A stretch of DNA of 64,000 nucleotides from Ruditapes philippinarum. Its lineage: Eukaryota. The position numbers and the translations under genes are program-made. Under the pieces are notes generated by a model. It was not told where the DNA came from, did no database searches, and saw only the letters and a program-made list of their open reading frames with translations. The stretch spans positions 248,001 through 312,000 of the forward strand of contig NW_026866967.1 of the NCBI RefSeq assembly GCF_026571515.1. The letters are read 5' to 3'. Positions 5,444 to 31,400 of this stretch are shown in pieces. How positions within the stretch are numbered: position 1 is the first letter of the stretch; every line of letters starts with the position of its first letter.

Positions 5444-5948
5444 ATGGATTCCGGATTTATACTAGTCATTTTTAAACTGTTTCTAGTAACAGAAATTTGT
5501 AGTCAACATTACCATAGGGAACGGACTCAACTTTACCCCATGTCCGATAAGTGTGAAATAGATCGAACTCATTTAGGTGACCATAAGATTGATATGAGGG
5601 ACGGAACGGAGGTGCAAGGTATGAAGGTAAAGTTTAAACGTTCGTGTCATCTACGGGATGTAGATGAATACCGCGGACTGAAATATGCCGAGCTTAATCT
5701 TTCAGATAAAAAGGCAATACGATTCCTTCCGAACAGAGACCTTGTCAGGCCAAAACTTAAGAAAGATAATAAAGAAAGATTTGCAACTGAGTTTAAACCT
5801 GTTTGTCCTCAAAAACTTATTGACGAAGTTAGAAAGTCATGGAATGGAATACCTGAAATAATTCTCGAAAGGCTTGTAAAAATTGGAAAGTTTACTGCTA
5901 AACAGATAGAGGCATGCCTATGGCTGAACTTGTTTGTTCCATTTAAAG
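5444..5948 (+). CDS. Variable first coding exon A: signal peptide + N-terminal part of a neuroligin-like (type-B carboxylesterase/cholinesterase-fold) protein; partial CDS ending at a phase-1 splice donor
   Basis: Hydrophobic N-terminus MDSGFILVIFKLFLVTEICS. Family motifs V-QG…VDEYRGLKYA…RFLP…FATEFKPVCPQK…QIEACLWLNLFVP (cf. neuroligin GVPYA..RF..P, ATxxxPVCPQ, QSEDCLYLNIYVP). Similarity stops at AAAG|GTAAGA (donor at 5949). Length 505 nt = 168 codons + 1. Confidence 0.88.
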
Positions 5949-6850
5949 GTAAGACTATAAACCGTATTGTACCATTAAACCTAGAACAACATGTTTTAAT
6001 ATTTTCTATGGAGACTATTTTAGGAAAAACAACATCTTTAGTAGAGAATCCACGTATTCTGAATTTAAGACGTTTTGTCCAAGTTTTTTGGTGGTAATTT
6101 ATTCAGTGACGTAAGTTATTTGATTTACAACCAACCTCCTGTTTTCTAATCTTTAACATGTGTCATTCAATAGTGAGAGACATCTTTAAAGATCCTGTAT
6201 GTTTTGTGGTTGATATTGTTACTGTGTGTATACCACACTTGCAAAAAGTTATATATGTATATAATTATGCAAATAAAATAATTTTCAAACATCGAAGAAT
6301 ATGTAAAATGTGTACTAAAACCATGAAAAAATGTGTTACAGGATCTTTAAGAAAAGGTTTACCAGTATTTCAATGCTAACTTTATATTGAATTTTGCCAT
6401 AACCACAAACAATATACTTTTAAGAGATTTTCAAACATATTGCATAGATTTCAGGCGATTAATCAGCTAGCTATCAAGTTTGTGTAAGTTCGACGAGTTC
6501 TATTTATATCAGATAATTAGGAAAACGATTGAAACATACATTTTATACATTTTCTCTTAAACCGTCTTCAAGAAAAGGTACATTGAAGCAGCTGTCATTT
6601 ATATTTTGAGTTTTATTTTCGTTAAATGTTTTTGCATGATTGTGCAAATGTTTAGCATTGGTTTACATGAACTGTTAATTATCGGGTAACAATCAATTTA
6701 AAGATGATACAATAAGATATATATTCATCAGGCATATATAAGCTATTCAAACTGTTTTCTCTTTCACTTTTGGAAATAATAATATCTAATTAACTTCTTG
6801 TCTTGACTAGCACATCTACATCACATATTACTGAGATGTCGTTGTCAAAA

Positions 6851-7087
6851 TGAGCCACGTCACGACAAAACCAACAAAGTGCGTTTGCGACCAGCATGGA
6901 TCCGGACCAGCCTGCGCATCCGCACAGTCTGATCAGGAGCCATGCTGTTCGCTTACAAACGGTATAACAAGTAGAGAAACTGATAGCGAACAGCATGGAT
7001 CCTGATCAGTCTGCGCGGATGCGCAGTCTGGTCTGGATCCATGCTGGTCGCAAACCCACTATGTTGGTTTTGTCGTGACGCGGCTCA
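6851..7087. mobile_element. Palindromic MITE-like element (~237 bp, ~100-bp inverted arms)
   Basis: TGAGCCACGTCACGACAAAACCAACA…GCTGTTCGCT (6851-6953) is a near-perfect inverted repeat of AGCGAACAGC…TGTTGGTTTTGTCGTGACGCGGCTCA (6985-7087). GC-rich insert in AT-rich intron. Confidence 0.85.
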
Positions 7088-9780: not shown

Positions 9781-9830
9781 AAGGATATTTCAAACTTAAT
9801 TTTTTTTAGTTCACCTGGTTTGTAAAAAAA

Positions 9831-9919
9831 TGCACTGTAACACCGCACTTTGGGGTCAAACGCACTTTGAGGTCGGACCCCATAGTGCGTTTGACCCCAA
9901 AGTGCGGTGTTACATTGCA
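9831..9919. mobile_element. Short fold-back (hairpin) element, MITE-like
   Basis: TGCACTGTAACACCGCACTTTGGGGTCAAACGCACT / AGTGCGTTTGACCCCAAAGTGCGGTGTTACATTGCA inverted arms of ~36 bp with 1 mismatch. Confidence 0.7.
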
Positions 9920-10257
9920 CTTCACATGCTCTAAGACAATCTGTTGTTTTTTTTTATTTTTAATGAAGTTTGGGTGACATCATTATCTAGAAATATATTA
10001 ATTTGGTTGATGTGTTAATGAATCTTCACATACTTTACAATATATGAGTGCCATCTATGTAAAAACTGTATCAACGTAACGGCCATTACAATTGTACTAC
10101 CTGAGATTTATTCACTTATTTTTTAAGCCTGTTTGATATAATGGATTATAGGTCAAACGTAAAAAAAGAGATTTACAAAAGTACAGCCAAATCCAACTTA
10201 ACAACCAATAAAATTCCTGTTTTTATTGTACGGATGGTGATAATCTTATTGCGGTGG

Positions 10258-10295
10258 TAACGCCAACACATGTGTTATCGCTTAACCCATCAACG
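10258..10295 (+). promoter_or_regulatory. Conserved upstream element 1, copy before exon B
   Basis: TAACGCCAACACATGTGTTATCGCTTAA vs TAACGCCAACACATGTGTGATCGCTTAA at 3783 (27/28 identical). Confidence 0.6.
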
Positions 10296-11545
10296 GTTGT
10301 TTTATATGTCTAACAATATGACCGAACATAAGTAATATCTTCAAGACAATGCCTTTATCTTGTAGGTATTGCTTTTCTAGTAGGGAAAAAATGTCAATAG
10401 TCTTAAGAGTCTCATTCGGGATGTTTCGGGATCTTCTAGCAGAAAAAAAGACCAACACACATTTCAACAGCTTAAAGCCTTTAATGCTAAGAAGATAGGA
10501 AGTACAAAACTTAGAAAAGCCAGGAGCGAGTTCGGGAAAATTACCATCGGAATAATACTGATATTTTTCCTCGTGACGTTTTTGTCTTCTTAATAAATCA
10601 AACTGTGCAATTACTCGGATAGATTAGTTTTATGTAATTAACCGAAAGCGAAATCTTTTTTAATGACTGGTAGAGCAAACGTGTCGACATACAATGATTC
10701 CTCTAAGCTGTTAGATATAACAGATAGACACATGCATATTGAATGAAATGGAAATTGCATTCAAATTCATTATAGGAAGTTCTATTGTATCGATTCGTAA
10801 GTTTATCTTTATAAGATCGTTGCACTAATAACGTAACATTTCCACGAAATAAAGAGAGTGATAAAATGAAGAACCATTCCATTATGAGGGATAATCTATC
10901 GGGCTAGTTTTTGCTCTCAAACACCGAGAAGTTTCGCAATTGTCAGGGTAATTAACGAGATATAAGATTGACCAAGAAGAGCTTTATCACAAATATTACT
11001 GCAAGAAATTCACTCGCGTTTACATCGTTACTGGCAGTAGGATTAGATTGAAGTGATAACGGCTACCATTACATGGATACTGGAATTTTGTATTAAAGCA
11101 GATATGCAATGAGGGAATATAGCGTGATAAAATTCGCTTAATTGTGTAAAGGAAATAGTAAAGCCGGAAAAGATAGGAAGATAAAAAATGGCTTACATCT
11201 TTTCCTAAATTGAGGTATCGAAATTTTGACGATCGTATAAAAAATAGTGAAAATGTGTTATTTCAGTGATATATTTCATTTTGGCATACTTTATATGAAA
11301 ATTATGATAGTATCTTTGTTTAAGATTAAATAACATGATACATTTAATCAATAAACTACATTCAAGAAAAAAAGTTTTAACGACTTTTGCCTTTAAAGGG
11401 AGAATTTTTTATTTGGTACGATACGGTTTGTTGATTTTTGAAAAAGCGGTGGCAAAATATAAGAAAAGTAATGTTTTCTCAAAGCTGATTGCTTGGTACA
11501 TTTTACAATATTCGCCATAAATTTTTCATATATTGGCGTGCAGAC

Positions 11546-12050
11546 ATGGGCACTCAATTTATTGTATCAATTGTATTTACTTTGATAATTGAAATACAGA
11601 GTCAATATTACAAAAATGGTCAAACGCAATTTTATTCCAAGCTTTCCGGTTATTGTAAATTAGACAGAACTTATTTAGGGGATCGGAAAATTGATATGCG
11701 AGATGGAACGGAAGTTCAAGGAATGAAAGTGAAATTCAAGCCTTCATGTGGGCTACGGGATGTTGACGAGTACCGTGGACTTAAATACGCAGAACTGAAT
11801 ATTGCTGATAAGCACAGTTTGCGATTTTTACCTAATAGAGACCGAGGGCGACCTACTTCAGACAAACATAGTAGAATACAATTTGCCACAGAATATAAAT
11901 CGGTCTGCCCACAAAAACCGATGGAAGACGTTTTAAAATCATTGAAAGGAATGCCTGAAAAAATATTGGAAAAAATGGTCGAAATTGGTAAATTTACCGG
12001 GAAACAAATTGAAGGATGTCTTTGGTTAAATTTGTTTGTACCTTATATAG
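11546..12050 (+). CDS. Variable first coding exon B, neuroligin-like N-terminus (partial CDS, phase-1 donor)
   Basis: ATG at 11546, in frame with the listed ORF 11489, which starts at TTG. Signal peptide MGTQFIVSIVFTLIIEIQS. Motifs VDEYRGLKYA, LRFLP, FATEYKSVCPQK, QIEGCLWLNLFVP. Ends ATAG|GTAAGG (donor at 12051). 505 nt, same length as exon A. Confidence 0.88.
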
Positions 12051-14769
12051 GTAAGGCTAAAAGTAATTTTATGTTTATCACCAACACCTCTTACATAATT
12101 AAATTCTTTCCCAATTAGGCTAATAGACGTGTATATACGTTTGTTAAGAGGTTATGACAAAATAAGTCTGAAATAGAGTGGTTTGTTGTGTACGTTCAAA
12201 TTCGTGATATTTAAATATATTACTCAACAAATACATTGCAATGCATATTTTACTTTTGACTATATCTTTTTTTATCTCGGCATTTGCTTCCCTTGTAATA
12301 AGTTGTTATAACCACCGTTATAGCTTTTTTGCTATGTAAAATCCGATCATTTATTTTGATTTGTATTTGTTTTATTTTGGTATAATATATAGGTGTAATT
12401 TATTATTATTTCTAGACTTTTGTTTACAATCTTTTGTACTGTAAAGCGGCGTTAAGCTTTCACTTAATAATGACTTTTTATCAATTTGACAGCCCTTGAT
12501 TACATTTTAAGTGGACATGTAAGTTCGAGGATGATACTCATTTTTTTCCTTTCCTATTTTCCAAATTTAAAGTTATAAGCCTTACTCGAGTACATACTAC
12601 ATACATGATTGTGATACGATTGTATTTCAAATGTTTCTTTCGTCCATTAATTAAATACCCTATTGGTTTTACATTGGCCATGATTACTCGCGAGAGCACA
12701 TTATTATTTATTTAGAACGACGAGGTTTTCTGCTTCATGTCTTTACTTAATTGGAAATGGGACAACGCATTAAGCTGCTAGATAATCATTGTGAACATAT
12801 ATTTAGATATATCAGTTGTATTTGTTGTTTGATTTAAATCTCAAAAGGACACACACTAGAAGAAGAAAGGTTACATGACTTTCATTGTACATCATAATTA
12901 ATTAGAAATATTCTGTCACATGTTAGGTTTGAATAAAACCTACATTTTTAATAAAATGAAACATTGGTTCAAATGGTTATTGAGGTATATATTAATTGTT
13001 TAGAAGTTACATGCAACCACGTTAATACGTTCAAATGGAGAAACAAAACTTAAACATTTAAAATTCATAAACCCACACGTTATCGTTTGGAATGTAATGA
13101 ACTGCACGATTTCGTTATAAATATAATGTGTATGACCTGAAAAAGAATGAATTGTGATATGTCGCAAAGTAAAATCGTATATTTAACTATTTATGTGTCG
13201 ACGTACTATAGCAAAAACTATAATAAAGGCCCATTATGCCACAGAAATGATTTTAGTTTTATTTTCTTAAAGCTTTTTATTTCCATTGTCCTTTCATAGT
13301 TTCCAAAATGATACTCATTGGTCAAGTACCTAAAACATGTTTTGCATTTGTTGCTTTTGTTTATTAATACAGTTATAATGATATGGAAGTCAAAATACTA
13401 ATTTTTACATATTGCTACTTTTATGACAAATATTTTCACATTCAGTGCTTCTTTCGTCTGGCGATAAGTATCTAATAACATGCTCTAAAACCATTTTTTA
13501 AATATTTTAAAATAAATGTGTGCCCTTTCTAAAGACGGAAAAAAATATTCATTTCTGAGGCATAATGTTCCTTCAATACATATAATACATACAAGAAAAC
13601 TCTTTGTATAATCATTTTCAGAATATGTTTCACATGTTTTTGCCTAATGTATTTGTTTTCATTGAAGGTCTTCTTTGGTCTCTAAAATTTTTTGTATAAA
13701 TGTAATATAGTTACTATAAGTCATATTGTTTCGACAGTTTGCAGTTGAATCACAATTATTCGAGAGGCGTATCTACAAGTTTGTACTTCTTTATGTTTTG
13801 ACAATAGATGACAAGGGGTTATCTTCTTTATTATTGTAATAGTGTAATAGAATTCTGTATCTGGCAATAACACAAGTTTACAGATTAATGCTATCATGGT
13901 ATCAGTTTTGTAAATGCTAGCGATAATATTGAGTTGCTTTTGCCACAAATCTAGAATAAGGTCAACAGAATGTACCTGTGGTACTACTAAGCACTAATCT
14001 GAAAACTTTGAATTATATAAATTCTTTATATGCCATTACAAGAGGGTGAAAAAGGGTAATTTTCATTAATATTTATGGTCCAGGAAAATGCTCATTAAAA
14101 GTAACATCAATTTATACTTATCCAAGGGTACATAGTGAGTGAACCGATGACAGTAAGAATAAATTTACATTCTGCCATATTTCATTTCAGTTTTAATATT
14201 TACTCCGACGAAATGATCAATAACTCATATGGCCAGAAAAAATTTCTGTAAACATCCATCGGAATTTACTTGTAACGTTCAAATTATAAAAATGGCGGGA
14301 CATTCATTGAACATTTTTGTCAGATCTTCATTTTCCTAATCATTTTCCAATATCAACCGTTGGTCAGTCATCACTATAACAGTCGGTCTTTATTCTGCTC
14401 AAACAACTTGACCCTGAAGAAAAGAGCACAATGTCACTTCATCAATTTAACGCTAAATCTTAACTGATTCAAAGCTGTTAGAACAGTCCGTTGAAAACTT
14501 GTCCGTTACAGAATAAAAGCGAAACAGTCAATATCGGACCATTAAAACACAAGTAAGAAGAACTAAACTTATCAAAGTTTTGTTTCTACACAGCAAGTCG
14601 TAGCTATGAAATTGTACATAAATGTCATTTGGAAAACAATCGTGATGAAAAAGAAAGCGTAATATTATAAACCACATATATATAATATCATGTTATTGAA
14701 TATAAATATCAGGCAAACTGTGTCCAAAGTCACACAACTTAAGATGATATTTCTATCTTATTATTTGTG

Positions 14770-15030
14770 TTTCAAAACCGATCCAGGAGAAAAACAAATT
14801 ATATGTCTGTAGGCGAATGGATGAGTGATTCAGTAGTCAAGTAAATCGCTTAGCTGCTTTTTATCGTGTAGATACGTTTAAACGCCAAACATATAGACAA
14901 AATTCATTTAGGAGTTATTGTCATTTCTTTGCGCTTAATGTTCATGAACTGTTGGAGGTTAAGGAATTCAGTCACGTCAAGAAGGCTACGTTTTCGGATT
15001 ATATTTTTTCAAATGTGTTTTGATAATGTC
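14770..15030 (+). repeat. Paralogous non-coding block shared by the C and E cassettes (copy before C)
   Basis: GTCTGTAGGCGAA…GTAGTCAAGTAAATCGC…TATCGTGTA…AAACGCC…TCACGTCAA..GGCTAC also occurs at 25650-25910. Confidence 0.7.
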
Positions 15031-16842: not shown

Positions 16843-17323
16843 ATGCATATGTCAAATGTTTTTGGTTTTACTGTCGGATTTCTAGTGCTGTTTGAATCAG
16901 AGTTTCTAAAGACATCATCAGAACCTTTCGGTAGGGTAGATGACAATGACAAGTGTAAGCTTAAAAGAAAACTATTAGGTGATCATAAGATAACAATGCT
17001 TGATGGAACCATCCTTAAAGGAATAAAGGTCGAGTTCAGGCCAATTTGTAGTCTAAAAAATGTTAATGAGTTTCGGGGTCTTCCATACGCAGAGATCGCC
17101 AAGTCAAGGTTCATTTCGCCAAGAGATCCAGGGAGATCTCATACGAAAGTAAGACATGCTATAAATCACAAAACAGTTTGCCCGCAGAAAACTTTGGCAG
17201 AATATTTGAACACGAAGAATGAGTTACCATTAGCAATTCGTGAAAAGTATTTTAAAATAGGAAAATATATCGGTGATCAAAGTGAAGAGTGCCTTTATCT
17301 TAACATATTCGTGCCCTACAAAG
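16843..17323 (+). CDS. Variable first coding exon C, neuroligin-like N-terminus (partial CDS, phase-1 donor)
   Basis: MHMSNVFGFTVGFLVLF hydrophobic leader (start could be the ATG at 16849). Motifs VNEFRGLPYA, SRFISP, VCPQK, QSEECLYLNIFVP, the closest match to the canonical QSEDCLYLNIYVP. Ends AAAG|GTAAGT (consensus donor at 17324). 481 nt. Confidence 0.9.
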
Positions 17324-20300
17324 GTAAGTTTATGAGTGATAAATGGATGTCATAACATAATAAAAGTTTATATGACAATTTACTTTAAGATGAAATGCTT
17401 TAAGTGCAACGCAACTGTTAAGTAATTAGTTCAAAATGGATCTACTTATTCGAATATTTGTTGTAAATTATAATGCATGCAAATTCAAAAAAGTATTTCC
17501 TTTATCGACATTTCTGTTAAATCGAAAATAGAAATACAAAACTCTCCTCCTTTTTGTAACTTATTTGCTGGTAAAACCTTTCAATGACGTAATGAGGAAC
17601 TCGTAGTTAACACATTATAATCGGTGTCATTATTATTCGCAATTCAGTTTTTTACAATGTTTTGCCAATCAAGTTTTCCCTATTAACATGTTACAGTAGA
17701 AATGAACGGACTGGAATTTTAAAGCAATGACAACATGTAAAAATACTTTAATGTTGGTTCATGGATATTAAAATAACTTCCTAGTTTGGTTAAAAATACG
17801 TTTTAGATATTTTGATAGCTATTGCATGTGAAAAACCCTTTCATTTAGTACATATATAAAATCTAAATTGTTTGGACTCTGATAATCAGGAAATGTTGTT
17901 TTCTTCAGTTGACAATAGGAATAACTCCATTGCTTGTCATTTAGAGGGTCAATATTTAGTCAATATTTAATCTCACCCTTTCTAGAGCAATTGTATTTCT
18001 GACAGATGGTAAAGAAATGTTTGGCATGTATATATGAACACATCTCTGAAATATCTAGCACGATATTCACCTGTTCGTTATTTAATAACTAGAACTTAGT
18101 TGAATTTTGGCTGATGTTGGCTGTATAATTTGCCTAGAAAAGCCCAATTAATCTTTTAGATCAAATAAAATTCATATAATTACGTAATTAACGTTGTGTA
18201 CGGTTAGATTCACTTGTTAGATAAAGTATTTGAGACAAGATACGATGTCTATTTGTTTTTTATAATAGAATTAACATCTTGGGGTAGGACAAAACAGTCA
18301 TTATCGATTATCTTACAAGACAGAAATCTTTTTTCGTCTAATTAGTTGAATTATCTGTCACGTTACGATTTGTGATTTGGTGCTTTATTATTAGAAATAT
18401 ATAACTTCAGTATAATTATATAAAATCGTACAGGTATTAAACTATACTTTTCATTCTCTTCATGTTCGTTCAATTTTGCCTATGTGGAATTGTTTCATTT
18501 CATTTTTTTTTCAAAATATTATAATGTTGTCTTAAAATGGTGGGATACATATAATTATTTTTATAATACTGCTAGTCTGTAACGTCGTTTGGACTTTTAA
18601 TACATATATGAACTATAAACACGAATGATGTACATACATTTTATTGACTTAAGAGTTATCTTAATACATAACTCTTGCCCACATAACCGGACAAGATTTA
18701 GACAGGAGTTACGTTTTTTTTTTGCGAAGGAAACTGTACATTTTCGAAATTTTGTAGGGATGAAACTATTTTAAAAAGAGCCATTCAGCAGATAGTTTAT
18801 GCATACTTTTATAAATATTCTTTCATTTTTGTTATTATTCTAATGTATCAATACACAATCCATTAAAACTTTAAAAAAAATGTTCTAAATAACATACATG
18901 TGCGGTTAAACAAGTAAAAGGCACCACACTATTATTTTGATAACATTTTTGTTAAATTATGCACACTTCTTAATCGAAGTGTAAAGTAAGATTAAATGTG
19001 AATAGATATAATTGACTTGTTCTGGTGTAAGATTTATGCAATCCAAGAAGTATATGTATCTTTTTGAACGGTTAAAGTATTTGAATTATATACGCATGGT
19101 TTAATAGGATACCGTTTTTATTCAAGTCTCAAACAATAAAATGCAAAGTCAGTACAAAATATACAAAATATACTTTGATCAGGTGCTTTTCTGAAACGAT
19201 TTTTTAAATAAAAAGATATATTTAACTTTTATATATTTTGCATTTTGTAATACCATATTACAATTTAAACGAAGTATTGCATTATGCTTACACTGACCCC
19301 TTCATTGTAATTTGTGTTGATGACAATAGTTGCTTCACAACAAATGACATGTTTGCAATTTTATGAAAGGATGTATGTAAAACAGTTTATAAATATTTCA
19401 TACTATATACATGCTCATGTGTATAACAATATTCTTCTAATTTTAACGTCATATTCTTAACTTGATTCATGTACGTTTTTCCAAGGCCTACGAATAACTT
19501 TTCAATGAATACAAAAACATAAGAGTTGCGTTTGGATGTCTACCAATAGCAATAATTAATACACAACATCGTTTTAATACCATTCATAATTGGAAACAGA
19601 TGCTGCATTTAGTATCTTAACAAAGCATGTCATTGTGATGTGCGATTTTTTCCTGATTTACATGCTTTTGCAATTAAGCTTACTCATCTAAGTCATTTCC
19701 AATTGAATTGATTATACATCACCTTACACAAGGAAAATGTATTGTGTATAGAATTTGAAATGAAAGAAAGAGTTCTAGATTGTTACATGCTTTTAGTTTT
19801 CCTTTCAATGAAATGAGTAATCCTTACATAAAATCTTCAATTGTTACAAATTAGCAAATCTCTTATCATTTGGACTCCGTAATTCTTGAGCAATGTCAAT
19901 TCAAACTACTTTAGGGTCTTTTATAACGTAATGCTTGTATAATGAATTCATAACTCGAACAATATGATATTTGTCCAAAATAATTAAATGTATACATATG
20001 TCATAAAATATCTTAAGAAATGTTAGGATAAACATTAAACGATATTTTATAGCTTAAAGTTGTGTGTCATTTCACTGTCCAAAAGATTAAAGATAAAAAT
20101 ATTTCTACATATAAGTTTTGTATAATTACATTACATTTCCTTTCTTTTGGCATTTACGTCAACACTGTTTTTAATCAATTTTATCACAATTTTAAGTGTC
20201 TTATTTTACGTATATATTTATACAGACCACATAAGGCATTTGTTTTAATACAATATGGTACACGTTATTACTAAATAGTGCAAACTATTGCAGCCACGGT

Positions 20301-22831
20301 GTACTGAAATGAACATTACTCTTCTTGATTTCTTGACGAATTAGATATATGAAATATATAATTAACTACAGTTGCATAATTATGTTAAAATAAATTATGT
20401 AGTGTCAATCAAGGCAAAAACGCATTCAACTGGCAATGACATTCATTTAAAAACCTAGTCAGAACACATCAATAACACGTGAGAAAAGAGAAACATTTGA
20501 GATAAATCGTCGTAAACGTCAAACTGTTTTTACAGAGGCATTAAGTGCATTTGTAACTTCTTCTTCGTAGACATAGACATATAGGAAAAACATGATGAAT
20601 GTCATATTTGACAAGGCAAGTATGCATTGCAAAATTCTAAGAAGCTCTATTATTCTGTAATGCTTATGTATTTGGGTCAAGATTTGTGCATATGTGCAGA
20701 TGAGTTTACAGATATCTCTCGAAATGTAACACTATTTAAGGTTTTTACTAAGTTTTGTTTAAAGATATACTATTAAGCTTAAATTTGTTTTTAGAAAATA
20801 TTGTTAATTACTACTCAGTGTCTTTGTAAAAATAAAATAATCAAGTTCTGACTTCATATAAAGAAGATACATTGTATGTTATGTTTAAAGTTCTAAACAC
20901 TATAGGTGGTCACATTTTGAATATATAGTGTCATTAAAAAAAGGAAATTCTTTAAGAAAAGAGCAACTTTACTTGGCTTGTAATAAGGATCGCAGCATCC
21001 AATAGATAGATTATACATTTGTTTATTTAAACTGGACATAATCATTAAGAACTTCATTGATTTCAATAAATTATTTTTTTCCTTAAGGATGAGCTTAGTA
21101 TATCTTTAGAATAATTACACTTTCAAATGTTTTAAACAAAAAAGGTTATTTGACAAATATTTGTGGTATATGTGTATTATAATTTCAAAACAAATAAAAA
21201 AACATAATCAACCATTTATCTAGTGTTTGTAAGGATTACATTCAGCTATTATACCAAATTAGCTAAAATAGTAATATAAATGTATAATAGTATGCTATTA
21301 AAGTTTATCAATATTTACAACTTTCTGAAAAGTTTGCATAGGATATTTTTTTATAGAATATTGCATTCAATATGAATGCCACCGAACATTTTTTGACAAA
21401 TAAAAGGAAAAAGGACACTGAAAATAAGATGTTGTTTTCCTTACATTGATGTCTTTATAACAAACAGCTGCTACATCAGGCTTTTGCATACTGAAAAAGC
21501 GAACGATTGCCCTTGCATAAATATTTATCCAAATATATGCCATTCTGACACAAGTCTTTTTCCCTGAACAATCAATAAAGCATTCAGTTGTATCACTTTT
21601 ATGAGAAAGAAACATTATTGCCTCAGCTTTGAAAAATCCCATCTAGATTCATTTGCGCTTTATATCATACATGCTACGTTTCATCGATGGTCTCCCAGGA
21701 CTTCTGTAACTTATTTTCGATCTTAAACAGCGATGAAAACCCGTCCTACAAACACATTATCAAGGAGATCATGGTCTATTCAGTGGTTTTCATACAGTTT
21801 TGATCAAATGACTTAAATATGCCGGTATATAAGATTGAAGCGATAAGTTTTCTAATTATTTATTTTTTATGTAAACTAAGTAAGAAGATTTGTAGCAACG
21901 ATCTAAAATGTTCAGAATCATTCAAAAGTATAAGTATACATATGACATACCGAGCTTTTAGTTAACCATAAGCATATTAGTCCGTCTTGTTTATGTCAAT
22001 AAAATTAATTAATCGGTTGATCAAAACTTTTGATATTGTGTATTTCATATAAATGTAACAATTCAAATTAAAATCGATTAGTTAATAAGTATGAACATAA
22101 AGCCGTAGACAATTATTATTTTGCCATTCAGATTTTGCAATGTTTAGATTTATTTTTTTTTTTTTTGATTTATCTGTACAAACTAACAACGGCAGACACA
22201 AAAGAGAAACAGAACAAGTGGGTAAAATAGGCAAAACGTTAAAAGTATTTACCTAAACTTAAGTTGAAATAGACATTAGTACAATGTGTGTGAAGAAAAA
22301 GTCAACTGCTTTAATAAGAGAGGAAAAACTTTCCTTGAACATCACAACGATGTGCCGTTCTTGGAAAATCGTGGTTTGCATGTGTCTGCCGCTCATCTCA
22401 AACACGGATATTTAAGACCAATTTAAATAACGACCATATATTATCTTACGAAACTGATTCATTCCTTGAGTTAGACCCGAGAGATGAAATCAAAAGACTT
22501 TTTGTGACATTCGTGCTGAAAAATCAATGCTTTGAAAAGTAAAATGAACGTAAAATGCAATTAGTTAATATATCTGCTTAATTGAAGCAGTCTTGGGTTA
22601 GTTTCATTCTTTTTTACTCCAAATAAAAGTAAAGTCCATCTCAATAATATTCACTGTTATAAAACAAAAACAAAAAAAAACGTATGCATATAATTATACT
22701 TTGCATGCTGCAAAATACTACAATCTAGGTCTAAATCGACATAGCAAAAACATAATGTAAAGCATATAATTTCACAAAATATAAACTGGAGCAATATATG
22801 TTCAGAGTTTAATGTTGCGATTGTTTTTATT

Positions 22832-22950
22832 GCGATAATAGGAATGTGAATATAACGCCAACTAACGTGTAATAACTTTAGCATCAACAACTATTTCCAA
22901 ATATCAAGGAGTTGGCAAACATCCCACTTTAGGAATAACAGTTGCAGATT
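22832..22950 (+). promoter_or_regulatory. Conserved upstream element 1, copy before exon D
   Basis: GCGATAATAGGAATGTGAATATAACGCCAAC…CATCAACAACTATTTCCAAATATCAA…TAACAGTTGCAGA aligns with 3771-3880. Confidence 0.55.
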
Positions 22951-24312
22951 TACCGGTCTGAACTAGGAATTATATTTGTTCTTGAGAAAATATGTTCTTT
23001 TATGTAACGTATATGTTGTATATGGATAACATTAGTGAAATCATGTTGGAATGATATACTTTCAAAATGTTATATGGCTATACTTTAATGCAAAATGTGA
23101 TTAAAAGTTACAAATGTGACACGTTCTTAATTTCATTAACTGTTCAGTTTAGGACAGAAAGCATAAAAGGTCATGCCTATGCGATCAAATTTCACTCTGA
23201 TTTCAAAGACTTGATTAAAAGGCGAAGGGAAGGAATCTTAAATCTATAATAAACTGTGAAACGCTTAAATGATGAATCAATAACATTCATGCCATGGAAA
23301 CGTTTATTACATCTCCAATCTTGTTGCACTTACCGACAGTTATTGTATGATACGCGCTACAACTGGTGAAGCAATTATTTGACTAATGGTGTCTAAAAAT
23401 AGCGGTTAGAATGGCGTATGCACTTCCGATAAAATATATGTAACATTTATATATCTTCAATGATTTTTGAGGATTTTCTGGAAACAGTATTGTAAAATCT
23501 ATACCATTCCACAGAATTGGAAACAATGCGTTGGATAACCAAATAAACGAACATATTCCAGATTGTCTTTCCGATTTACGTTGTATCTGATTCTAATAAT
23601 AGTTGACAAGAATAAGGTTTGTCATGGAATGTATTTGTGCTTATATTGCCATAAACATGGATTGATATTGTCGGTAGAGACCTGTTTCCTAAATTGTGTA
23701 ACCTGCTTTGAAAGAGAACCGATGCAAATTTACTTATTTCTTTACATGAATGACGTAGTTATTTGGTGTTCTGAGACGAGTAAGGACTGGAAAAAGTTAA
23801 AACACAAAAGGATCATACTGTGTTGCATATAAAGGAGAGATTATAAAGGGTAAATATTAACGGTGTTTCATTGGTTGATATCACCAATATATTTTGCAGC
23901 TTTGGAAATAACTTTGATGTGTATCATTTAACATTTCTTTCCAAATCTTTTGTATCAGTGAATTGAAATTGATTTTTGTGTGTATGTAATTTATCAGGAC
24001 CTTGTCTAGACATATAGGGTTGTAAAATACAAATAAAAGCAACAGATTAAAATATTTGACAACCAAAAGTGCTTCATTGATGTTATAACAGATAGCATGT
24101 TAGACTTTACAAACACTGTTATCAAGGTTATGTTTGTGCAATTTATAGAATGTTTAATAGCGACGCTAAGTAACGTATATGTCAGAAAAGTACCAGAGAC
24201 AATAGAAACCTAATAAACAGTCATATTTAGTTAGTAAACCTCTTATCATTTGTAGTATCTGATTATATGTATATAAATAAAGTAAGAGCACGTGACAGAC
24301 ATCTATATAAAC

Positions 24313-24820
24313 ATGGCTAACATATCTTTTATAGTTATACTCGTTATAATATCGATTTTCAAAACTCACAGTCATTATTACCAGGAAAGTCAAAATCAGT
24401 ATAAAGGGACAGAAATCGATGTTTGTGAATTGGATAGAACTTTTCTTAGTGGCAAAAAAGTTGCTATGATTGATGGTATTAAGGTTCAGGGGTTAAAGGT
24501 TAAGTTTAAACCTATTTGTGCCCTTAAAGAAGTGGATGAGTATCGAGGAATACAATACGCCGACCTTACTAGCTATCATATGAAGAGTCTACGATTTTTA
24601 CCAAACAGACAACGTGGAAAATCTGTAACAAATACTATAAACAATGAACGATTCGCCACACAACATAAACCAGTGTGTCCCCAAATGTTTATGGATGAGG
24701 TTATTAAGTTCCATAAAGGTCTGCCTGAAGAACTACGTGCCAAGTTGTCTAAACTTGGAAATTTTACGAAAAAGCAAACTGACGGGTGCCTTTGGCTAAA
24801 TCTTGTTGTTCCCGAAAAAG
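24313..24820 (+). CDS. Variable first coding exon D, neuroligin-like N-terminus (partial CDS, phase-1 donor)
   Basis: ATG at 24313. Signal peptide MANISFIVILVIISIFKTHS. Motifs VDEYRGIQYA, LRFLP, FATQHKPVCPQ, QTDGCLWLNLVVP. Ends AAAG|GTAAGG (donor at 24821). 508 nt. Confidence 0.88.
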
Positions 24821-25649
24821 GTAAGGATGGTCTTAAAATGTATTAAAATGATTATAAAATCCCTAGTGTGACATGTACTCTAAATGCGCTTGTAACTGTA
24901 AAGAGTACCAGACTACTAAATTTGGTTTTGCATAGAAATAAATAAATGCGCACATTTATCGGTAAAGAAACGCATTAACACATTGTCTTATACTAACTGT
25001 TTTCAAATAATTATGTTGTTATATGATCTTCTTTTTTCATCCATTTCTTTTCATTCAGCAACATCTTGCATTAAAATTTACATTTCATATAAACTGTCAT
25101 TGTCTTAGGTTCATGTGTTATGTCTAGACATAATAATTTAAAAGTCTCTGAATCAACGTGCTTTTACAAATTGAAGATGAACATCAAATATCCATAGAAA
25201 ATGTAAAGCATTTAATCCTACTTGGCCTACCTTTTCGTTTAATAAGAAGCTCTAAATTTGAACATGATTGAAAGTCAGATAAGCATAAAATGCCTTAATA
25301 TATAAATTTGTTCTAGCCATTGATTTAAACGTTGCGTCTATCTGGATAAACACTGTGCATTTCTACGACAAGTTTTACAATGTTAATTAAGTTAAACTGG
25401 AACTACTTGAAAACAAAAATAAACGTCTAAAACAGCTACAGCTAGAGCTGTTTAAATCGTTATTTTTTCTATCAAGGTATGCTTTTATCACTTTTGTAAG
25501 TTCATGTAAAGTGGTGTTCATTAGTATTTTACATTCTACTTTTTAAATTCATAGACTAGTTCTTATTTGATTTTTCTATCCATTTAATTAAAAATATAGG
25601 TATTAAGTAGCAAGCGGAGAAGAAAGCTTTATCTCATAAAACGGATTTT

Positions 25650-25910
25650 CAAGACAGATTCGGGAAAAAACAAATAATCTGTCTGTAGACGAACGAATCA
25701 GTGTTTCAGATAAACTCGTAGTCAAGTAAATCGCGAGCACTTCTTCTATCGTGTAACCACTTTTACAAACGCCGTAAATATAGATTTACTTCTTTAAGGA
25801 TATATAATAAGTTCTGTAGTTTATTGTCTGATGAATGTTAATGAAGTCTTTCACGTCAACTCGGCTACACATTTGGAATATAATTTTATGTTGTGCTTTG
25901 AAAAAGTTTA
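25650..25910 (+). repeat. Paralogous non-coding block shared by the C and E cassettes (copy before E)
   Basis: Same motif order as 14770-15030, including identical GTAGTCAAGTAAATCGC. Confidence 0.7.
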
Positions 25911-26356
25911 TGGTTTTAAATACATTTGGCTCGAAGAAGCGTCAAATGATGTAGAGACTTGTTGCTCTCTATAAATGAAACAATTAAGTCAAGCGCATAA
26001 TTTCTTGAAATATTAATCAAACATATTGGCTACACAGAGCAACTAAAAAACTATAAAATCGCTCCTATTTGGTCAATACGGATTTTAGATGCACAATAGA
26101 GGTAATAAACCCATTTCTAAAAAAAATAATCAAGACAGGGGTGTCGGCATTATTGTAATTAGTAATGTTCGTACTCAAACAATGGAAAGTTATGCTAAGG
26201 AATTTTCAACATAACGTTCTAGGTAATTTACAAGTATTTTGTATTGTCGATCCATTTGTTGTTTCATGTCGACGGAATAGCGAGTACTAAAATGTGAAAT
26301 GCTTTAACAAGTGTGCTTGAGGATTATAGTGTTTTGATTGTATTTATGGTGCTGTT

Positions 26357-26470
26357 TGGAGTACACATATAACGCAAACACATGTGTTATCACTTAAGTC
26401 TCTGACAATTGTTTCCAAATATCTTGCAGCTCGGAAGTAACTTTTAACTTACTTGTAACAGTTGCAGATA
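26357..26470 (+). promoter_or_regulatory. Conserved upstream element 1, copy before exon E
   Basis: TAACGCAAACACATGTGTTATCACTTAA…ACAATTGTTTCCAAATATC…GTAACAGTTGCAGA aligns with the A and D copies. Confidence 0.6.
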
Positions 26471-27940
26471 TGCCATTTTTTACTACGGTTAAGCAACGAT
26501 CGATACCTAGAGAACGGATAACACACAGAAAGGATTTAATGATTGCTTAAAAAAAATACTCATTCTAAATAAGTTTTATTGAGTTATTAAATATGATGTG
26601 TAAAAGGAAATAGTTAGTAGTGTGATAAAAATATCTGTTCATTTTGAATAAAACTTATATTTGCAGTGTCAAAAAATTTCAGTGAATTAAAGAAAATGTT
26701 AACAACACTAGGGCAATTGTAACTGGTGAAAACCTATAGTAAGAATTTATTTGTCATTTAAATAAATTGATCTATTGAATTGCTGTTCGCAAAATTTGAA
26801 GAAAAAAACTCTATATATCGCTACTTGATAGATTAGTATCAATATTGTTTATGGAAAAAATATCTGATATATCTTATATAAAATCGTTGCTGTAAACAAA
26901 ATAGAAACAAATTATTCTACTAAATGTACGAGTGGTACAGAAGAGAAAACGGCTTATAAATGATAATATATTGGAGTTACTAGTGGTTTCTTATAGACCG
27001 GGAATAGTTTTGTATTTGTGAGGATAATTAACGAGATGTATGATTGACCATGAGAAGCCTTATCCAGTAATTCATTGTAGCTCAAATCTGTAGGAGCAGA
27101 GGAATGAGATATAATGATAGAAGATAACCGTTTATCCGCGCTGCTTTTGAAAGTATAACTTAGTATTGAAGAACTCTGTAATGGGGCATGTTAGCGTGAC
27201 AAGAAATTCCTCTTTGTGTAGCACAAATAATTCACAGCATTTGATAAAGAGCAAAGAAAGAGAAAACGGATATTTCACGTAGTTTCACCGAAGGATTAAA
27301 GTGAATGTTTCAGATGTTTCATATATTCCTAGTGTTCGGATAGAACTATTTTCAAGAAAAAAGAAAATAATCTTAAGAAATTTCTTAATCATACATCAAC
27401 TTGACATAACGAATACATAATAGTGTTTACATGTCTGATGGATCGTCGACGAATATGTTTACATTTACCCAGCGCTTTGTTCACTTGTATTCTAAATATA
27501 GTCGTATGTCATCACTCTGAGGTAGGTCTAGACAAACCATTACACATACAATTTTGACTGTCACTTGTTCAATCAGTTCGATTCAATTCAACAATTTGAT
27601 AAAAAAATATACAAAAACATGGAAATATGAGTACTTATTATAACGTCGAAACAGTGGAGGAAGTGGAATTTGAGGTGTTATATAGAAGTAAAAACGAGTT
27701 TGAAATGGAGTAAAATAAATCAACAATGAAAACTATTCCGTTCACAATAATTGTATTTGTGCTATATGTCTGTTGTATCATTTACAAATGCTAAAGCTGC
27801 TCTTGCTTTATCTTATGTGAATTGTGTTCACATTTTGAAGAAGTATAAACATAAATAGAGCATTTTTAATAATAGAAATAAACGCTGGCTTGGTGCAATG
27901 CCAAATCATTCACACGTGAAAGTAATGTAACTTAACGATA

Positions 27941-28417
27941 ATGGATGCGCCGTTAATTTTAATCATAATACAACTTCTTTTTGTTATTGAAATCACAAGT
28001 CAATATTATAAAGAAACTTCAAACCAATATGGCCCTAAAACGTCTGTGTGTGAGCTGGAAAAAAAGCGTCTTGGTGACCGAAAAATTATCATGATTGACG
28101 GTACTGAGATTCAGGGAATTAAAATACAATTTAAACAAATTTGTAATCTTAGAGATGTTTATGAATTTCGAGGACTTCCGTATGCTGAGATAGGACTGTC
28201 AGGTTTTTGTCACCACGTGACCAAGGACGGTCTACGTCAAGTGTGAGACACGCTATAAATCATAAAGCAGTTTGTCCCCAAAAAGTCATGAAGGATTTCT
28301 TAAGAAGACTTGAAGGAATTCCAACTGAGCTACATGAGCGTTTATCTCGAATTGGCACATTTATAGGAGATCAAAACGAAGAATGTTTATTTATCAATAT
28401 TTTCGTACCCTATAAAG
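27941..28417 (+). CDS. Variable first coding exon E, neuroligin-like N-terminus, carrying a 1-nt frameshift at ~28201 (sequencing error or pseudo-exon)
   Basis: The two listed ORFs (27941-28246 and 28207-28467) join into a full paralog of exon C if one A is restored at 28201 (TCA GGT TTT TGT -> TCA AGG TTT TTG = S-R-F-L; exon C reads TCA AGG TTC ATT). Signal peptide, GLPYAEI, VCPQK and QNEECLFINIFVPYK are present. Donor AAAG|GTAGGT at 28418. Confidence 0.85.
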
Positions 28418-31400
28418 GTAGGTCCATAGCAGCTTATTACCCAAACAAACTTTCCGCTATCTGTTAATTTACTTTGTATCTCTTCTATTTCATATCAGTC
28501 TATTTAAAATTGTGTATCATGTTTAATAACATATAAAGTGTCTACGATTAAACAGAGTTGATGTCTTCAAGAAATTGCAAATCTATCTCTAAAACAATTC
28601 GTGTGTCAAACTTTCTTTTTATTTTTGTTTATTGAGCAAATCGTTATTGATCAGTAAAGTCTTATTTCTATACATTTCTGCATAGATTAATCGACTTGAT
28701 AATCTTTCTTTTAAAGAGTTTTGAATTTGAAGATGCACTTATTGCAATATTCCAAAAGTGTCGTATCGTAATCGATTCGTTGTTAAAACACGAGTTGGCA
28801 TTTAGAAGTATGAGGCTTGATTGTTATATAACAATCATCGTTAAATGTTTGCTTTTGTTTACGAGCATAATCGAATCCACAACTTCATGGAATTTTTAGG
28901 CTTTACATTAGGGAAATAGTCCATTACGATTTTAGAAAACTCTTCCACAATTTGTTTTGACATGTCTGTTATGATAACATCTAAAAGACAAAAGAGATTA
29001 TACTTTGTTATTGTATAGAGACGAAACCGGTAAGAACGAGCACTGCCAAGTATAATGTATATAACTATGTTATGTCTAAATCATGTAAATTTCGACATAG
29101 TTTGAAACAATGATGAGATATGTTTGACATATAGGTCGTATATTGACTTTAAGTACGAATATCACTAATAGACCGCCTTTGTTTTACTACTTTTTAGTCA
29201 AAGAACGTAACATAGAACATTGGAGAAAAATTTACAATATTTATATGGCAATATGTGTTTTTGTTTATGTCTCGGACCTTCTGGAAGGAAAAATGTCTGC
29301 CTATAGAAATCAACAATTACTCTTATTTAAATCATTAGTTATTGTATGTATATAAGTATCTGTACGTATGAAGAATGTAGAAACATTTACGGCAACTTAA
29401 AAGTTAAAAAGATTGACTTAAAAGTATTGTTGTGATATCATTCGTTGTTGCTTTTGAGTTATTTGTACATTTAAGTTAAAGTTTAATTAGAAAATTTGAA
29501 GTGAATAGCATTGTGTCTGTGAAAAATATTGATAAGGTATGTACATATACATTAAACGAAAGAAATACTTTTGAGTCATTATTAAAGATTGATATTGCTG
29601 TCCTGCATTTTGAACAGTATCTGTTTTAAAAGTGTTATATTGCATTGTTTATAGTTTTACAAAGTGATTTCATACCAAACCTTATCCAAAACGTCTGCAG
29701 TGGCAATATTTGATTGCAATTCGCTTCTTTTTTTTTAATTCCAAACTTCCGTTAATATTAATATACAGCCATGGATTCAAGTTAAATGCCTTACGAGATG
29801 TGTGTTCATAATTCTTAATGAAGTTTATTCAATGTGATGGGTGTATTTAAGTAGACGTGTAAATGTTTTCACTAATTGTACATCTAGCAAGGACTTCTAT
29901 ATGTAGACAAGACGCCTTGAAAAAAGAGCATTTAATGAGGAAAGAAGTGATGTTATTCCCTCAGTGTGAACGCCTTATCCGTGTTCCATTTATTTTTAAT
30001 TAAACGTAAATATCTAAATATCTAAAATGGGTGAGATAAAATTTATTCCACAAACATAAAAATGTATTTTAAAGCATAACATATCGAATAATGTGTTTTT
30101 ATGAGATGCTGTTTAACAAAAATTCTGATAAAAATAACATAAATAATAACATATCGACGATTAGTTCTATTTCTCTAAATATTTGATTTCACTTCAATGA
30201 AACTGTGAATAGTTTTATATTTATGACCATGTTCATCTTCATTTTACCTGTTTAATAACGCTTGTCAGTGTAAGTAACACATTTAAGCGTTTAAATTACG
30301 TTTAAACTTGCCACTTCAGTTGGTGCATAGTTGTAATAAGTTTCCAAGGTGTTCTGAGTTACTATAGCGAATCCCGCCATCAAATCAATGTACATTATTA
30401 CGACCTTATCCCAGAAAGTCGGAACAATGCTTTGATAATTATTCTATCTCGATACATTTTCTTTACAAAGTTTAATTAAAAGCAATGCGTTTATTTACAA
30501 GAGGTATTCATATAACTTTTAACGATTTGTTGTGAAATGTATGAAGAAAGAAAATCAAATAAAATTTTACAACAACAACAATAGTTATTTTTAAAAAATG
30601 GTGCTTTATCATATGTTTATAATAAAGCAATAAAATTACACAAATTATCATTTTGGAACTATGCCCTTTTTGAACTGTGCAAAATCTTTATTTCTATATA
30701 AATTTAATCAATTAATCTGTCGGTTAACAACTATAGCAAATGATTTTTCTAAAAAAATATCATTTAAAGACATAAGTTTTGGACAACATGATGAATCGCT
30801 ATCAATGTCATATTGTTAAACACTAGCAGTAAGTGCATATGAATAGCGGTACGGAAAGAAATAAGACATTAATGTTCTGAGAAACATGCTTACTGTCAGT
30901 TATTACAGGAAAAATATGCATAGTAGAAATTCCTTGAGGTCCTGAGCTTTTTTTTATATGAGTTTGATTGATGATGGTCATGAAACATAAAATGCACACT
31001 GTTGTATACTACATAGTGAAGTTAGTTTATCAGTACATAGTTCCACGAATATAATTGAATTTCTTTCCGAAATAAATAGTATTATTAGTATAAAAATTAT
31101 TAAAGACAATTATTTATTAAACAGATGAAAGCTTACAAAGAAGATAAAGTCAGGTGAAAAAAATAAGATTAAATTAAATATAAAAGGGAAACTGCCAACA
31201 CTGTTCAGTTGTGATTTATATATATATATTAAACTTTATTTCAATGGGTATAAATAAATTAAGTTTTTATCAACACAAATGTTAAAACATTTTTTCTGTT
31301 TGAAGTGATTAGAAGCCTTGTTGTGAATGGCGTTTTTACCAAAATAGCTCTATATGTTGAATTGATCCAAATCAACAAAATGAATGCTTGTCATAAAAGC

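What the first reader, a model, noticed from the sequence alone, without database searches (positions are those of the whole stretch)
5444..28423. Protocadherin-style cluster of five variable first exons for a neuroligin-like gene
Seen: five same-strand paralogous exons, 3.6-7.5 kb apart. Each starts with its own ATG and signal peptide and ends at the identical codon position in a phase-1 GT donor (5949 GTAAGA, 12051 GTAAGG, 17324 GTAAGT, 24821 GTAAGG, 28418 GTAGGT). I found no other part of the ~550-aa esterase-like domain between them or downstream in the window, so they are not five complete tandem genes. Established: the motifs GxxYA…RF..P…PVCPQ…QxExCLxLNxxVP are the N-terminal part of the cholinesterase-like domain. 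The long insert between VCPQ and ExCL is typical of neuroligins, and the first coding exon of vertebrate neuroligins ends just after LNIYVP, where splice-site A inserts. Tandem variable first exons spliced to shared constant exons are known for clustered protocadherins, UGT1A and chelicerate sDscam. Inference: one gene makes at least 4-5 ectodomain isoforms by alternative promoter/first-exon choice, a possible neuronal cell-recognition code built on neuroligin. I know of no such architecture described for this family. More cassettes may lie outside the window.
Basis: partly seen in the sequence, partly recalled or inferred. Interest (0 to 1): 0.95.

Follow-up and report, generated by a model that had tools for sequence, protein, structure and literature searches.

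The report
Clam neuroligin with alternative first exons
One Manila clam neuroligin gene has five tandem alternative first exons in this window and a sixth 83 kb downstream, all modelled onto the same constant exons to give six versions of the extracellular domain's N-terminal part; RefSeq already models these isoforms here and in other molluscs, but I found no paper describing them.

Summary
There are five paralogous exons on the + strand, V1 to V5, at 5444-28417. Each has its own ATG and hydrophobic leader and ends at a GT donor after the LN..VP motif. The window holds no other esterase-domain exon.

V1-V4 are 100% identical to the N-termini of Ruditapes philippinarum RefSeq neuroligin isoforms X4, X5, X6 and X3. 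V5 gives X7. A sixth first exon, 83 kb downstream of V5, gives X1 and X2. All seven isoforms share an identical 760-residue constant part.

An independent RNA-derived contig joins the V5 donor to 25 letters that occur once in the genome. That site is on the same contig and strand, 98.5 kb downstream, and the join continues the neuroligin reading frame.

As assembled, V5 has a 1-nt deletion. It is intact in that RNA contig and in another individual's DNA.

RefSeq models the same layout in Mercenaria, Mya, Mytilus, oysters and a scallop. Patella and Haliotis have two first exons each.

The proposed protocadherin-like recognition code is untested. I found no paper describing the arrangement. I class it as a new member of a known kind, of moderate interest.

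The parts
5444..5948 (+). V1: alternative first coding exon. It has an ATG, a leader and 168 codons plus 1 nt; the GT donor is at 5949. It equals the N-terminus of RefSeq isoform X4.
   Evidence: 100% over 168 aa to XP_060577078
11546..12050 (+). V2: alternative first coding exon, with the donor at 12051. It equals the N-terminus of isoform X5.
   Evidence: 100% to XP_060577079
16843..17323 (+). V3: alternative first coding exon, with the donor at 17324. It equals the N-terminus of isoform X6.
   Evidence: 100% to XP_060577080
24313..24820 (+). V4: alternative first coding exon, with the donor at 24821. It equals the N-terminus of isoform X3. RNA-like contigs cover 23063-24779 in patches, which suggests a 5' UTR of at least 1.2 kb.
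   Evidence: 100% to XP_060577077
27941..28417 (+). V5: alternative first coding exon, with the donor at 28418. The assembly lacks 1 nt at 28199/28200. RefSeq isoform X7 therefore starts at an internal Met. RNA-like contigs cover 26861-28417 and then splice.
3698..3882 (+). Conserved non-coding element, about 1.6-1.7 kb upstream of the V1 ATG. Candidate promoter or regulatory block.
10175..10347 (+). The same conserved element, upstream of V2.
22774..22953 (+). The same conserved element, upstream of V4. It lies about 110 nt before the first RNA-like contig (23063).
26287..26475 (+). The same conserved element, upstream of V5.
14770..15008 (+). A second conserved upstream block, about 1.8-2.1 kb before V3. 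It is 69% identical to 25647-25887, which lies before V5.
28418..64000 (+). First part of the roughly 98.5-kb intron that runs from the V5 donor to the shared acceptor at C15454:374889 (window-equivalent 126889). No esterase-domain exon lies here.

Best explanation
The window holds the distal part of one neuroligin gene of the Manila clam, Ruditapes philippinarum. The gene spans about 130 kb.

It has six alternative first coding exons: V1-V5 in the window and V6 83 kb further on. Each encodes its own start codon, its own signal peptide and the first 120-150 mature residues of the cholinesterase-like domain. That stretch covers the N-terminal strands and the disulfide-bonded Cys-loop.

I found no sign of splicing into V4 or V5 from upstream. 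If the V exons have no acceptor, a transcript that starts at one of them can only join its phase-1 donor to the first acceptor downstream. That acceptor is constant exon 2, at C15454:374889. The V exons lying between are removed as intron. This would make usage mutually exclusive, as in clustered protocadherins and UGT1A.

The result is six proteins. They differ in about a quarter of the globular ectodomain. They share the rest of that domain, the stalk, the membrane anchor and the PDZ-ligand tail.

Shown:
- the exon array;
- the identical constant part in the RefSeq models;
- the V5-to-exon-2 junction in RNA-derived sequence;
- RNA-like contigs over V4 and V5;
- intact one-to-one counterparts of all five V exons in a related species, with synonymous sites saturated between the paralogues.

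Inferred:
- one promoter per V exon;
- functional differences between isoforms, probably in partners other than the canonical neurexin face.
For: - Array and donors.
- V1-V4 are 100% identical to the N-termini of XP_060577078, XP_060577079, XP_060577080 and XP_060577077. V5 gives XP_060577081 and V6 gives XP_060577075 and XP_060577076.
- The constant 760 residues are identical in all seven isoforms.
- A 501-nt contig of run X11 covers 27943-28417 and then carries 25 letters unlike the intron. Those letters occur exactly once in the 1.4-Gb genome, at C15454:374889 on the + strand. Joined in phase 1 they read ..VPYK-EWNETEKLP.
- The remaining exons lie at 378735-379556 and 381590-382624.
- In runs X11 and X13, from two studies, contigs cover 23063-24779 and 26861-28417. 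Neither run covers 24900-26860. This fits separate transcription units.
- A conserved upstream element, 71-80% identical between copies, lies before V1, V2, V4 and V5.
- One-to-one counterparts of all five cassettes, all intact, exist in a related species. The V4 and V5 counterparts have the same longest-contig length, 11,842 bp, so they are probably on one contig.
- Between paralogues dN is 0.25-0.60, and dS is saturated or undefined.
- RefSeq models the same layout in at least 10 other molluscs.
Against: - I saw direct junction evidence only for V5, and in one contig of one run whose RNA label is a guess.
- For V1-V4 and V6 the junctions rest on RefSeq Gnomon models. I could not inspect their supporting reads.
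- The contigs over V4 stop 41-92 nt short of its donor.
- No transcription start site was mapped.
- Raw RNA reads (X22) were sparse. They also cover the stretch between V4 and V5 at low depth.
- V3 lacks the upstream element.
- Nothing was learned about tissue or cell-type usage.
Confidence: 0.9

Rival explanations
1. There is one promoter upstream of V1. An untranslated leader exon is spliced to one of the V exons in a mutually exclusive way, as in Dscam1-type internal cassettes. The V exons would then not be first exons with their own promoters.
For: - No start site was mapped.
- RNA-like contigs extend more than 1 kb upstream of the V4 and V5 ATGs, so the true 5' ends are unknown.
- X22 raw reads give low coverage between the cassettes.
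Against: - No joint into a V exon was seen.
- The single loose end before V4, at 23896, turned out to be a 9-nt length polymorphism and not a splice.
- Coverage upstream of V5 runs from 26861 to the ATG in two runs, broken only by short gaps between contigs. Their start points differ, so there is no sharp acceptor.
- A conserved block lies in the same position upstream of four of the five cassettes.
- Each RefSeq protein starts at the V exon's own ATG.
Confidence: 0.06
2. The distal cassettes are decaying partial duplicates of exon 1. Only V6 makes functional protein, and the V1-V5 transcripts are noise.
For: - V5 carries a frameshift in this assembly.
- The distal cassettes evolve faster than V6 and faster than the constant part. 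Between R. philippinarum and the related species they are 66-79% identical, against 91% for the C-terminal exon.
Against: - Four open frames of 160-169 codons survive although synonymous sites are saturated.
- All five counterparts are intact in a related species, and V5 is intact in two other sources from this species.
- All 18 members of the distal clade keep four cysteines and the fold motifs.
- V4 and V5 are covered by RNA-like contigs, and V5 is correctly spliced.
Confidence: 0.03
3. Each cassette belongs to a separate gene with its own downstream exons, nested or interleaved.
For: Dreissena and Mactra annotations list single cassettes as small stand-alone genes.
Against: - Neither the window nor the contig shows any other esterase-domain exon apart from one constant set.
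- The acceptor sequence is unique in the genome.
- The seven RefSeq isoforms share one constant part.
- The stand-alone models simply read through the donor into the intron.
Confidence: 0.01

Closest known systems
UGT1A locus (vertebrates)
   Same: It has a tandem row of paralogous first exons, each thought to have its own promoter, all joined to shared downstream exons. As here, the variable exon encodes the N-terminal part of the protein and the shared exons encode the rest, including the membrane anchor.
   Different: It is a different protein family (glycosyltransferase). In UGT1A the variable exon encodes a whole separate domain. Here it encodes about a quarter of a single alpha/beta-hydrolase fold, which must pack against the constant core. 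Usage there is tissue-specific; usage here is unknown.
Clustered protocadherins (vertebrates)
   Same: Variable first exons in tandem, each with its own ATG and signal peptide, spliced to constant exons. Each protocadherin variable-exon promoter carries a conserved sequence element. Here an element of about 180 nt recurs upstream of four of the five cassettes.
   Different: A protocadherin variable exon encodes the whole ectodomain, the membrane span and part of the tail. There are 50-60 of them, chosen stochastically with CTCF and enhancer looping. Here there are six exons, each encodes only part of the ectodomain, and there is no evidence on how one is chosen.
Chelicerate sDscam 5' cassette clusters
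   Same: An invertebrate cell-adhesion gene with tandem 5' variable cassettes and alternative promoters.
   Different: It belongs to the immunoglobulin superfamily, has many more cassettes, and its isoforms show homophilic specificity. Neuroligins are heterophilic, binding neurexin.
Vertebrate neuroligin splice site A, and neurexin alternative promoters
   Same: The boundary between variable and constant parts falls exactly where vertebrate neuroligins insert splice site A, just after LNIYVPTE(D) (alignment; isoform pairs). The partner family, the neurexins, is itself diversified by alternative promoters.
   Different: Vertebrate neuroligins vary by small inserted cassettes (A and B). They do not swap the whole first coding exon.

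Membership tests
Neuroligin | The extracellular cholinesterase-like domain is closest to neuroligins, not to active esterases. | tested here: met
   In the PDB search the top 14 distinct sequences are all neuroligins 1-4 (E 4e-106 to 2e-97). The best acetylcholinesterase scores 2e-58. The constant exon is 56% identical to a Babylonia neuroligin-4-like protein.
Neuroligin | The catalytic serine of the GxSxG elbow is replaced, so the protein is non-enzymatic. | tested here: met
   The constant part reads TLFGHGHGAALV. It aligns to NL4 TIFGSGAGASCV, with Gly in the nucleophile position.
Neuroligin | Type I membrane protein: one membrane span after a Pro-rich stalk, followed by a cytoplasmic tail. 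| tested here: met
   By inspection only; no predictor was run. The stalk contains PSPPPPPLTPP. A hydrophobic run (LSIVIAVGAGILFINILISAVTYF) is followed by QRKRIAKLR and a tail of about 210 residues.
Neuroligin | C-terminal PDZ-binding motif. | tested here: met
   The protein ends in ...NNAITIV, a class I type (T-x-V) as in vertebrate -TTRV. Binding itself was not tested.
Neuroligin | Binds neurexin. | not testable with these tools
   The loop that aligns to the neurexin-contacting NQGEGLKF of NL4 reads TRKEAYSYL in the clam. It lies in the constant part. That this NL4 loop contacts neurexin is recalled from memory, not tested here.
Variable-first-exon cluster (protocadherin / UGT1A type) | Tandem paralogous 5' exons on the same strand, each with its own start codon. 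| tested here: met
Variable-first-exon cluster (protocadherin / UGT1A type) | All variable exons splice to the same constant exon. | tested here: met
   For V5, an RNA-derived contig and a unique acceptor. For V1-V4 and V6, seven RefSeq isoforms with an identical constant part. I could not see the reads that support those models.
Variable-first-exon cluster (protocadherin / UGT1A type) | Each variable exon has its own promoter. | tested here: inconclusive
   Separate covered blocks upstream of V4 and V5, with an uncovered gap between them, in two runs. A conserved element upstream of four of the five cassettes. No start site was mapped.
Clustered protocadherins specifically | The variable exon encodes the whole ectodomain plus the membrane span, and choice is stochastic in single neurons. 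| tested here: not met
   The first half is not met: the variable exon encodes only Pfam COesterase positions 11-94 of 515. The second half cannot be tested here.

The most novel reading that the evidence does not exclude
The array is a true protocadherin-like system. Each cassette would have its own promoter, marked by the conserved upstream element of about 180 nt. Individual neurons, or other cells, would choose among the promoters stochastically or combinatorially. Neuroligin dimers would then carry a cell-specific surface signature. The distal clade's extra disulfide and N-terminal extension would create new partner specificities. This would be a cell-identity code evolved independently in molluscs on a synaptic organiser.
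Probability: 0.1. Interest if true: 0.85.

Novelty: new member of a known kind. Interest (0 to 1): 0.55.

Why it matters
Neuroligins are central synaptic organisers. Their known diversity comes from gene copies and two small splice inserts. Here a different route is used: the whole first coding exon is swapped. That changes about a quarter of the extracellular domain, including the Cys-loop, and it is also the likely way to put each isoform under its own regulation.

The layout is old and widespread in bivalves, and gastropods show two-exon versions. It therefore appears to be a general molluscan way of diversifying this receptor. It currently sits unremarked in automatic annotations.

It also gives a natural experiment on how far one part of an alpha/beta-hydrolase fold can vary against a fixed core. 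Finally, several genome annotations (Dreissena, Mactra, some spiders) list single cassettes as tiny stand-alone genes, which is an error worth correcting.

Tried and rejected
- **Reading the DNA downstream and upstream of the window:** V6 and the constant exons are therefore known only by coordinates and through RefSeq proteins.
- **The look-up of encoding contigs:** The ENA, JGI and Logan contigs that carry the cassette counterparts could not be read. I could compute no dN/dS between orthologues and could not inspect the counterpart array.
- **Whole-genome Pfam COesterase scan:** it did not list the window's cassettes. About 80 mostly intronless carboxylesterase genes filled the scored candidates.
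- **Metagenome scan for the start of exon 2:** no match.
- **Protein searches with cassette queries:** they returned only genomic read-through ORFs and no spliced fragments.
- **Loose end before 23896 in X11:** I considered it as a splice into V4 and rejected it. It is a 9-nt length difference from the reference.
- **Loose ends of X22** at 26554, 26772, 27436, 28369 and 28372: not interpretable, with only 3-4 reads each.
- **A numeric dN/dS:** not obtainable, because synonymous sites are saturated.
- **Rfam and tandem-repeat scans of the window:** nothing relevant.
- **Pfam on the longest ORFs elsewhere in the window:** nothing relevant.
- **Joined models:** I built and searched no joined exon model of my own. 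The only spliced sequences I used are public RefSeq proteins that the tools returned. In the local dN/dS script the two in-frame pieces of V5 were used with the broken codon left out.
- **Structure and complex prediction:** not run. Sequence similarity to solved neuroligins was already decisive, and the tools give no model coordinates for surface mapping.
Full report
**1. What is in the sequence**

ORF listing and direct reading confirm five paralogous open exons on the + strand. They are V1 5444-5948, V2 11546-12050, V3 16843-17323, V4 24313-24820 and V5 27941-28417.

Each starts with an ATG followed by a hydrophobic leader. Each ends two residues after the C(L)xLNxxVP motif, directly before GTAAGA, GTAAGG, GTAAGT, GTAAGG or GTAGGT. 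V1-V4 have lengths of 1 modulo 3, so their donors are phase 1.

The exons are 36-64% identical to each other in protein, with tblastn E-values of 1e-28 to 1e-68. Each matches positions 11-94 of the 515-position Pfam COesterase model. Two full-length mollusc neuroligins searched against the window find only these five places. No other part of the domain and no further cassette lies in 1-64000.

V5 as assembled lacks one base in a Ser codon at 28199/28200. Its length is 0 modulo 3, and the ATG frame stops at 28245-28247.

**2. Where the window lies and what follows it**

The window is contig C15454:248001-312000 of a 1.4-Gb genome.

A genome-wide search with V2 finds the five cassettes. It also finds one more divergent copy at C15454:359447-359752 on the same strand, and two copies on another contig that belong to other neuroligin genes.

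A COesterase match covering positions 206-486 lies at C15454:378735-379589. It is 56% identical to residues 283-551 of a Babylonia neuroligin-4-like protein.

I could not read this DNA.

**3. Direct splicing evidence**

I laid four public runs on 22700-28699.

- In run X11 a 501-nt contig matches 27943-28417. It then continues with 25 letters (AATGGAATGAGACTGAAAAACTTCC) that are unlike the intron.
- That string occurs exactly once in the genome, at C15454:374889-374913 on the + strand. This is 98.5 kb downstream of the V5 donor, beyond the sixth cassette, and 3.8 kb before the 378735 exon.
- Joined in phase 1 it reads ...VPYK-EWNETEKLP, which is the neuroligin continuation.
- The same contig carries an extra C after 28199, which restores the V5 frame.
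- X11 and X13 come from two different studies. Their contigs cover 23063-24779 (V4 and more than 1 kb upstream of it, in patches) and 26861-28417 (V5 and about 1.1 kb upstream). Neither covers 24900-26860. This pattern is expected for RNA from two separate units, not for genomic DNA.
- These runs are only guessed to be RNA. The spliced contig shows that X11 at least contains RNA-derived sequence.
- True RNA-seq reads (X22, 4% of the run sampled) touch both exons at low depth.

**4. Public gene models**

A profile search seeded with a full-length neuroligin plus the cassettes returned P0079. Its first 169 residues are 100% identical to V4. It is XP_060577077, 'neuroligin-4, Y-linked-like isoform X3' of Ruditapes philippinarum, and this identifies the organism.

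Its 90% cluster holds isoforms X1-X7 on one 651-kb contig. The assignment is:

| Isoform | First exon |
|---|---|
| X4 | V1 |
| X5 | V2 |
| X6 | V3 |
| X3 | V4 |
| X7 | V5, starting at an internal Met because of the assembly frameshift |
| X1, X2 | sixth exon (V6), C15454:359231-359764 |

X1 and X2 differ by two residues (GK) at the junction. This fits a second donor 6 nt further on.

All seven share an identical 760-residue constant part that starts with EWNETEKLPVMIFIHGE. Mapping X1 back onto the genome gives exons at 359231-359764, 378735-379556 and 381590-382624.

For V1-V4 and V6 the junctions rest on Gnomon models whose supporting reads I could not see.

**5. What the protein is**

- The top 14 distinct sequences in the PDB search are neuroligins 1-4 (E down to 4e-106). 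The best acetylcholinesterase scores 2e-58.
- The nucleophile elbow reads GHGHGA, aligned to NL4 GSGAGA, so there is no catalytic serine.
- A Pro-rich stalk, one hydrophobic span followed by QRKRIAK, a tail of about 210 residues and a -TIV end complete the neuroligin layout. I judged these by inspection.
- The variable/constant boundary coincides with the vertebrate splice-site-A position.
- The loop that aligns to the neurexin-contacting loop of NL4 lies in the constant part. That this loop contacts neurexin is from my memory of the published complexes.
- The cassettes therefore probably do not change the canonical neurexin face directly. This step is inference.

**6. Age, conservation and spread**

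Counterparts of all five cassettes, each intact, exist in an unnamed related species in ENA contigs. The V4 and V5 counterparts have the same longest-contig length, 11,842 bp, so they are probably on one contig. V5 is also intact in a JGI genomic contig of R. philippinarum itself (P0058).

A maximum-likelihood tree of 43 first-exon peptides gives five one-to-one pairs with 98-100% support. It also shows:

- V6 groups with the corresponding exons of Mercenaria and Mya (100/99). These sit in a weakly supported (92/81) group with the usual first exons of gastropods, octopus and Lingula.
- V1-V5 fall in a separate clade with 100/100 support. It also contains Mercenaria, Dreissena and Mactra sequences and some unnamed ones.
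- V1 and V2 split after the Mercenaria lineage separated.

All 18 members of this distal clade share an extra pair of cysteines 29-40 residues apart (31 in most). They are C37 and C68 in V1. The ten from Ruditapes, Mercenaria and the related ENA species also carry an N-terminal QYY-type extension. V6-type exons lack both features.

Between paralogues dN is 0.25-0.60, and synonymous sites are saturated. Third codon positions differ at 56-64% of sites. Open frames of 160 or more codons would not survive that much divergence by chance.

The distal cassettes change faster than the rest of the protein:

| Comparison | Part | Protein identity |
|---|---|---|
| R. philippinarum vs the ENA species | V1-V5 | 66-79% |
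| R. philippinarum vs the ENA species | C-terminal exon | 91% |
| R. philippinarum vs Mercenaria | V2 | 76% |
| R. philippinarum vs Mercenaria | V6 | 85% |
| R. philippinarum vs Mercenaria | constant esterase part | 88% |

RefSeq isoforms with different N-termini and an otherwise identical remainder occur in many other molluscs:

| Species | Distinct first exons |
|---|---|
| Mercenaria mercenaria | 4 |
| Mya arenaria | at least 4 |
| Mytilus, across four species | at least 6 |
| Crassostrea virginica | two genes, 4 and 5 |
| Ostrea edulis | 5 |
| Saccostrea echinata | 4 |
| Mizuhopecten | 3 |
| Patella | 2 |
| Haliotis | 2 |
| Octopus | 1 |

**7. Candidate regulatory elements**

An element of about 180 nt recurs 1.3-1.7 kb upstream of the ATGs of V1, V2, V4 and V5. 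The copies lie at 3698-3882, 10175-10347, 22774-22953 and 26287-26475.

Its core is 71-80% identical between copies. That is more conserved than the coding exons, which are 51-67% identical at the nucleotide level. It is not a high-copy repeat by the genome DNA search, although that search is insensitive. V3 lacks it, but shares another upstream block with V5 (14770-15008 and 25647-25887).

For V4 the element ends about 110 nt before the first RNA-like contig. Calling it a promoter element is inference.

**8. Literature**

Five full-text searches and one review on wiring receptors gave no description of alternative first exons in any neuroligin. The library does not hold most subscription papers.

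**9. Verdict**

Novelty is limited, because automatic annotation already models these isoforms and the mechanism is a known kind. It appears undescribed for this family, is widespread in molluscs, and its biological use is open. My saturation and counterpart results agree with it.

Noticed in passing
window 28199-28200: The assembly lacks one base in a Ser codon of V5. An RNA-derived contig (extra C after 28199, plus A>C at 28201) and a JGI genomic contig of the same species are intact. RefSeq isoform X7 is truncated to an internal Met as a result. This is probably an assembly error or a rare allele.
   Followed up: partly
window 3698-3882, 10175-10347, 22774-22953, 26287-26475: A non-coding element of about 180 nt is conserved upstream of four of the five cassettes. 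It is more conserved than the coding sequence. It contains CACATGTG and the palindrome AACAATTGTT. V3 has no copy.
   Followed up: partly
V1 residues C37 and C68, and the equivalent positions in V2-V5: All 18 distal-clade cassettes, across several bivalves, carry an extra conserved cysteine pair. The ten from Ruditapes, Mercenaria and the related ENA species also carry a QYY-type N-terminal extension. Canonical first exons have neither. The pair probably forms an extra disulfide.
   Followed up: partly
outside the window: C15454:359231-359764 (V6): Isoforms X1 and X2 differ only by Gly-Lys at the exon junction. This fits two donors 6 nt apart. The GK also matches what read-through of a G|GTAAG donor would encode.
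   Followed up: no
other genomes (Dreissena KAH3813460, Mactra KAL4220131, spider entries): Single first-exon cassettes are annotated as small stand-alone proteins of about 150-190 residues that read through the donor into the intron. These are likely mis-annotations of neuroligin first exons.
   Followed up: partly
whole genome: There are more than 80 COesterase matches. Most are single open frames of about 520 residues, apparently intronless, and they often lie in tandem clusters (for example C4782, C13019, C3990, C1688). This is a large carboxylesterase expansion unrelated to the neuroligin gene.
   Followed up: no
window 54140-54330, 2334-2470, 32141-32306 (-): A short interspersed repeat of about 150-190 nt, 70-76% identical between copies. 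It explains the similar short ORFs at 2389-2622 and 54202-54459.
   Followed up: partly
window 6851-7087 and 9828-9922: Two near-perfect palindromes (241 nt at 85% and 95 nt at 91% self-complementarity) lie in the spacers after V1 and before V2. They look like MITE hairpins.
   Followed up: no
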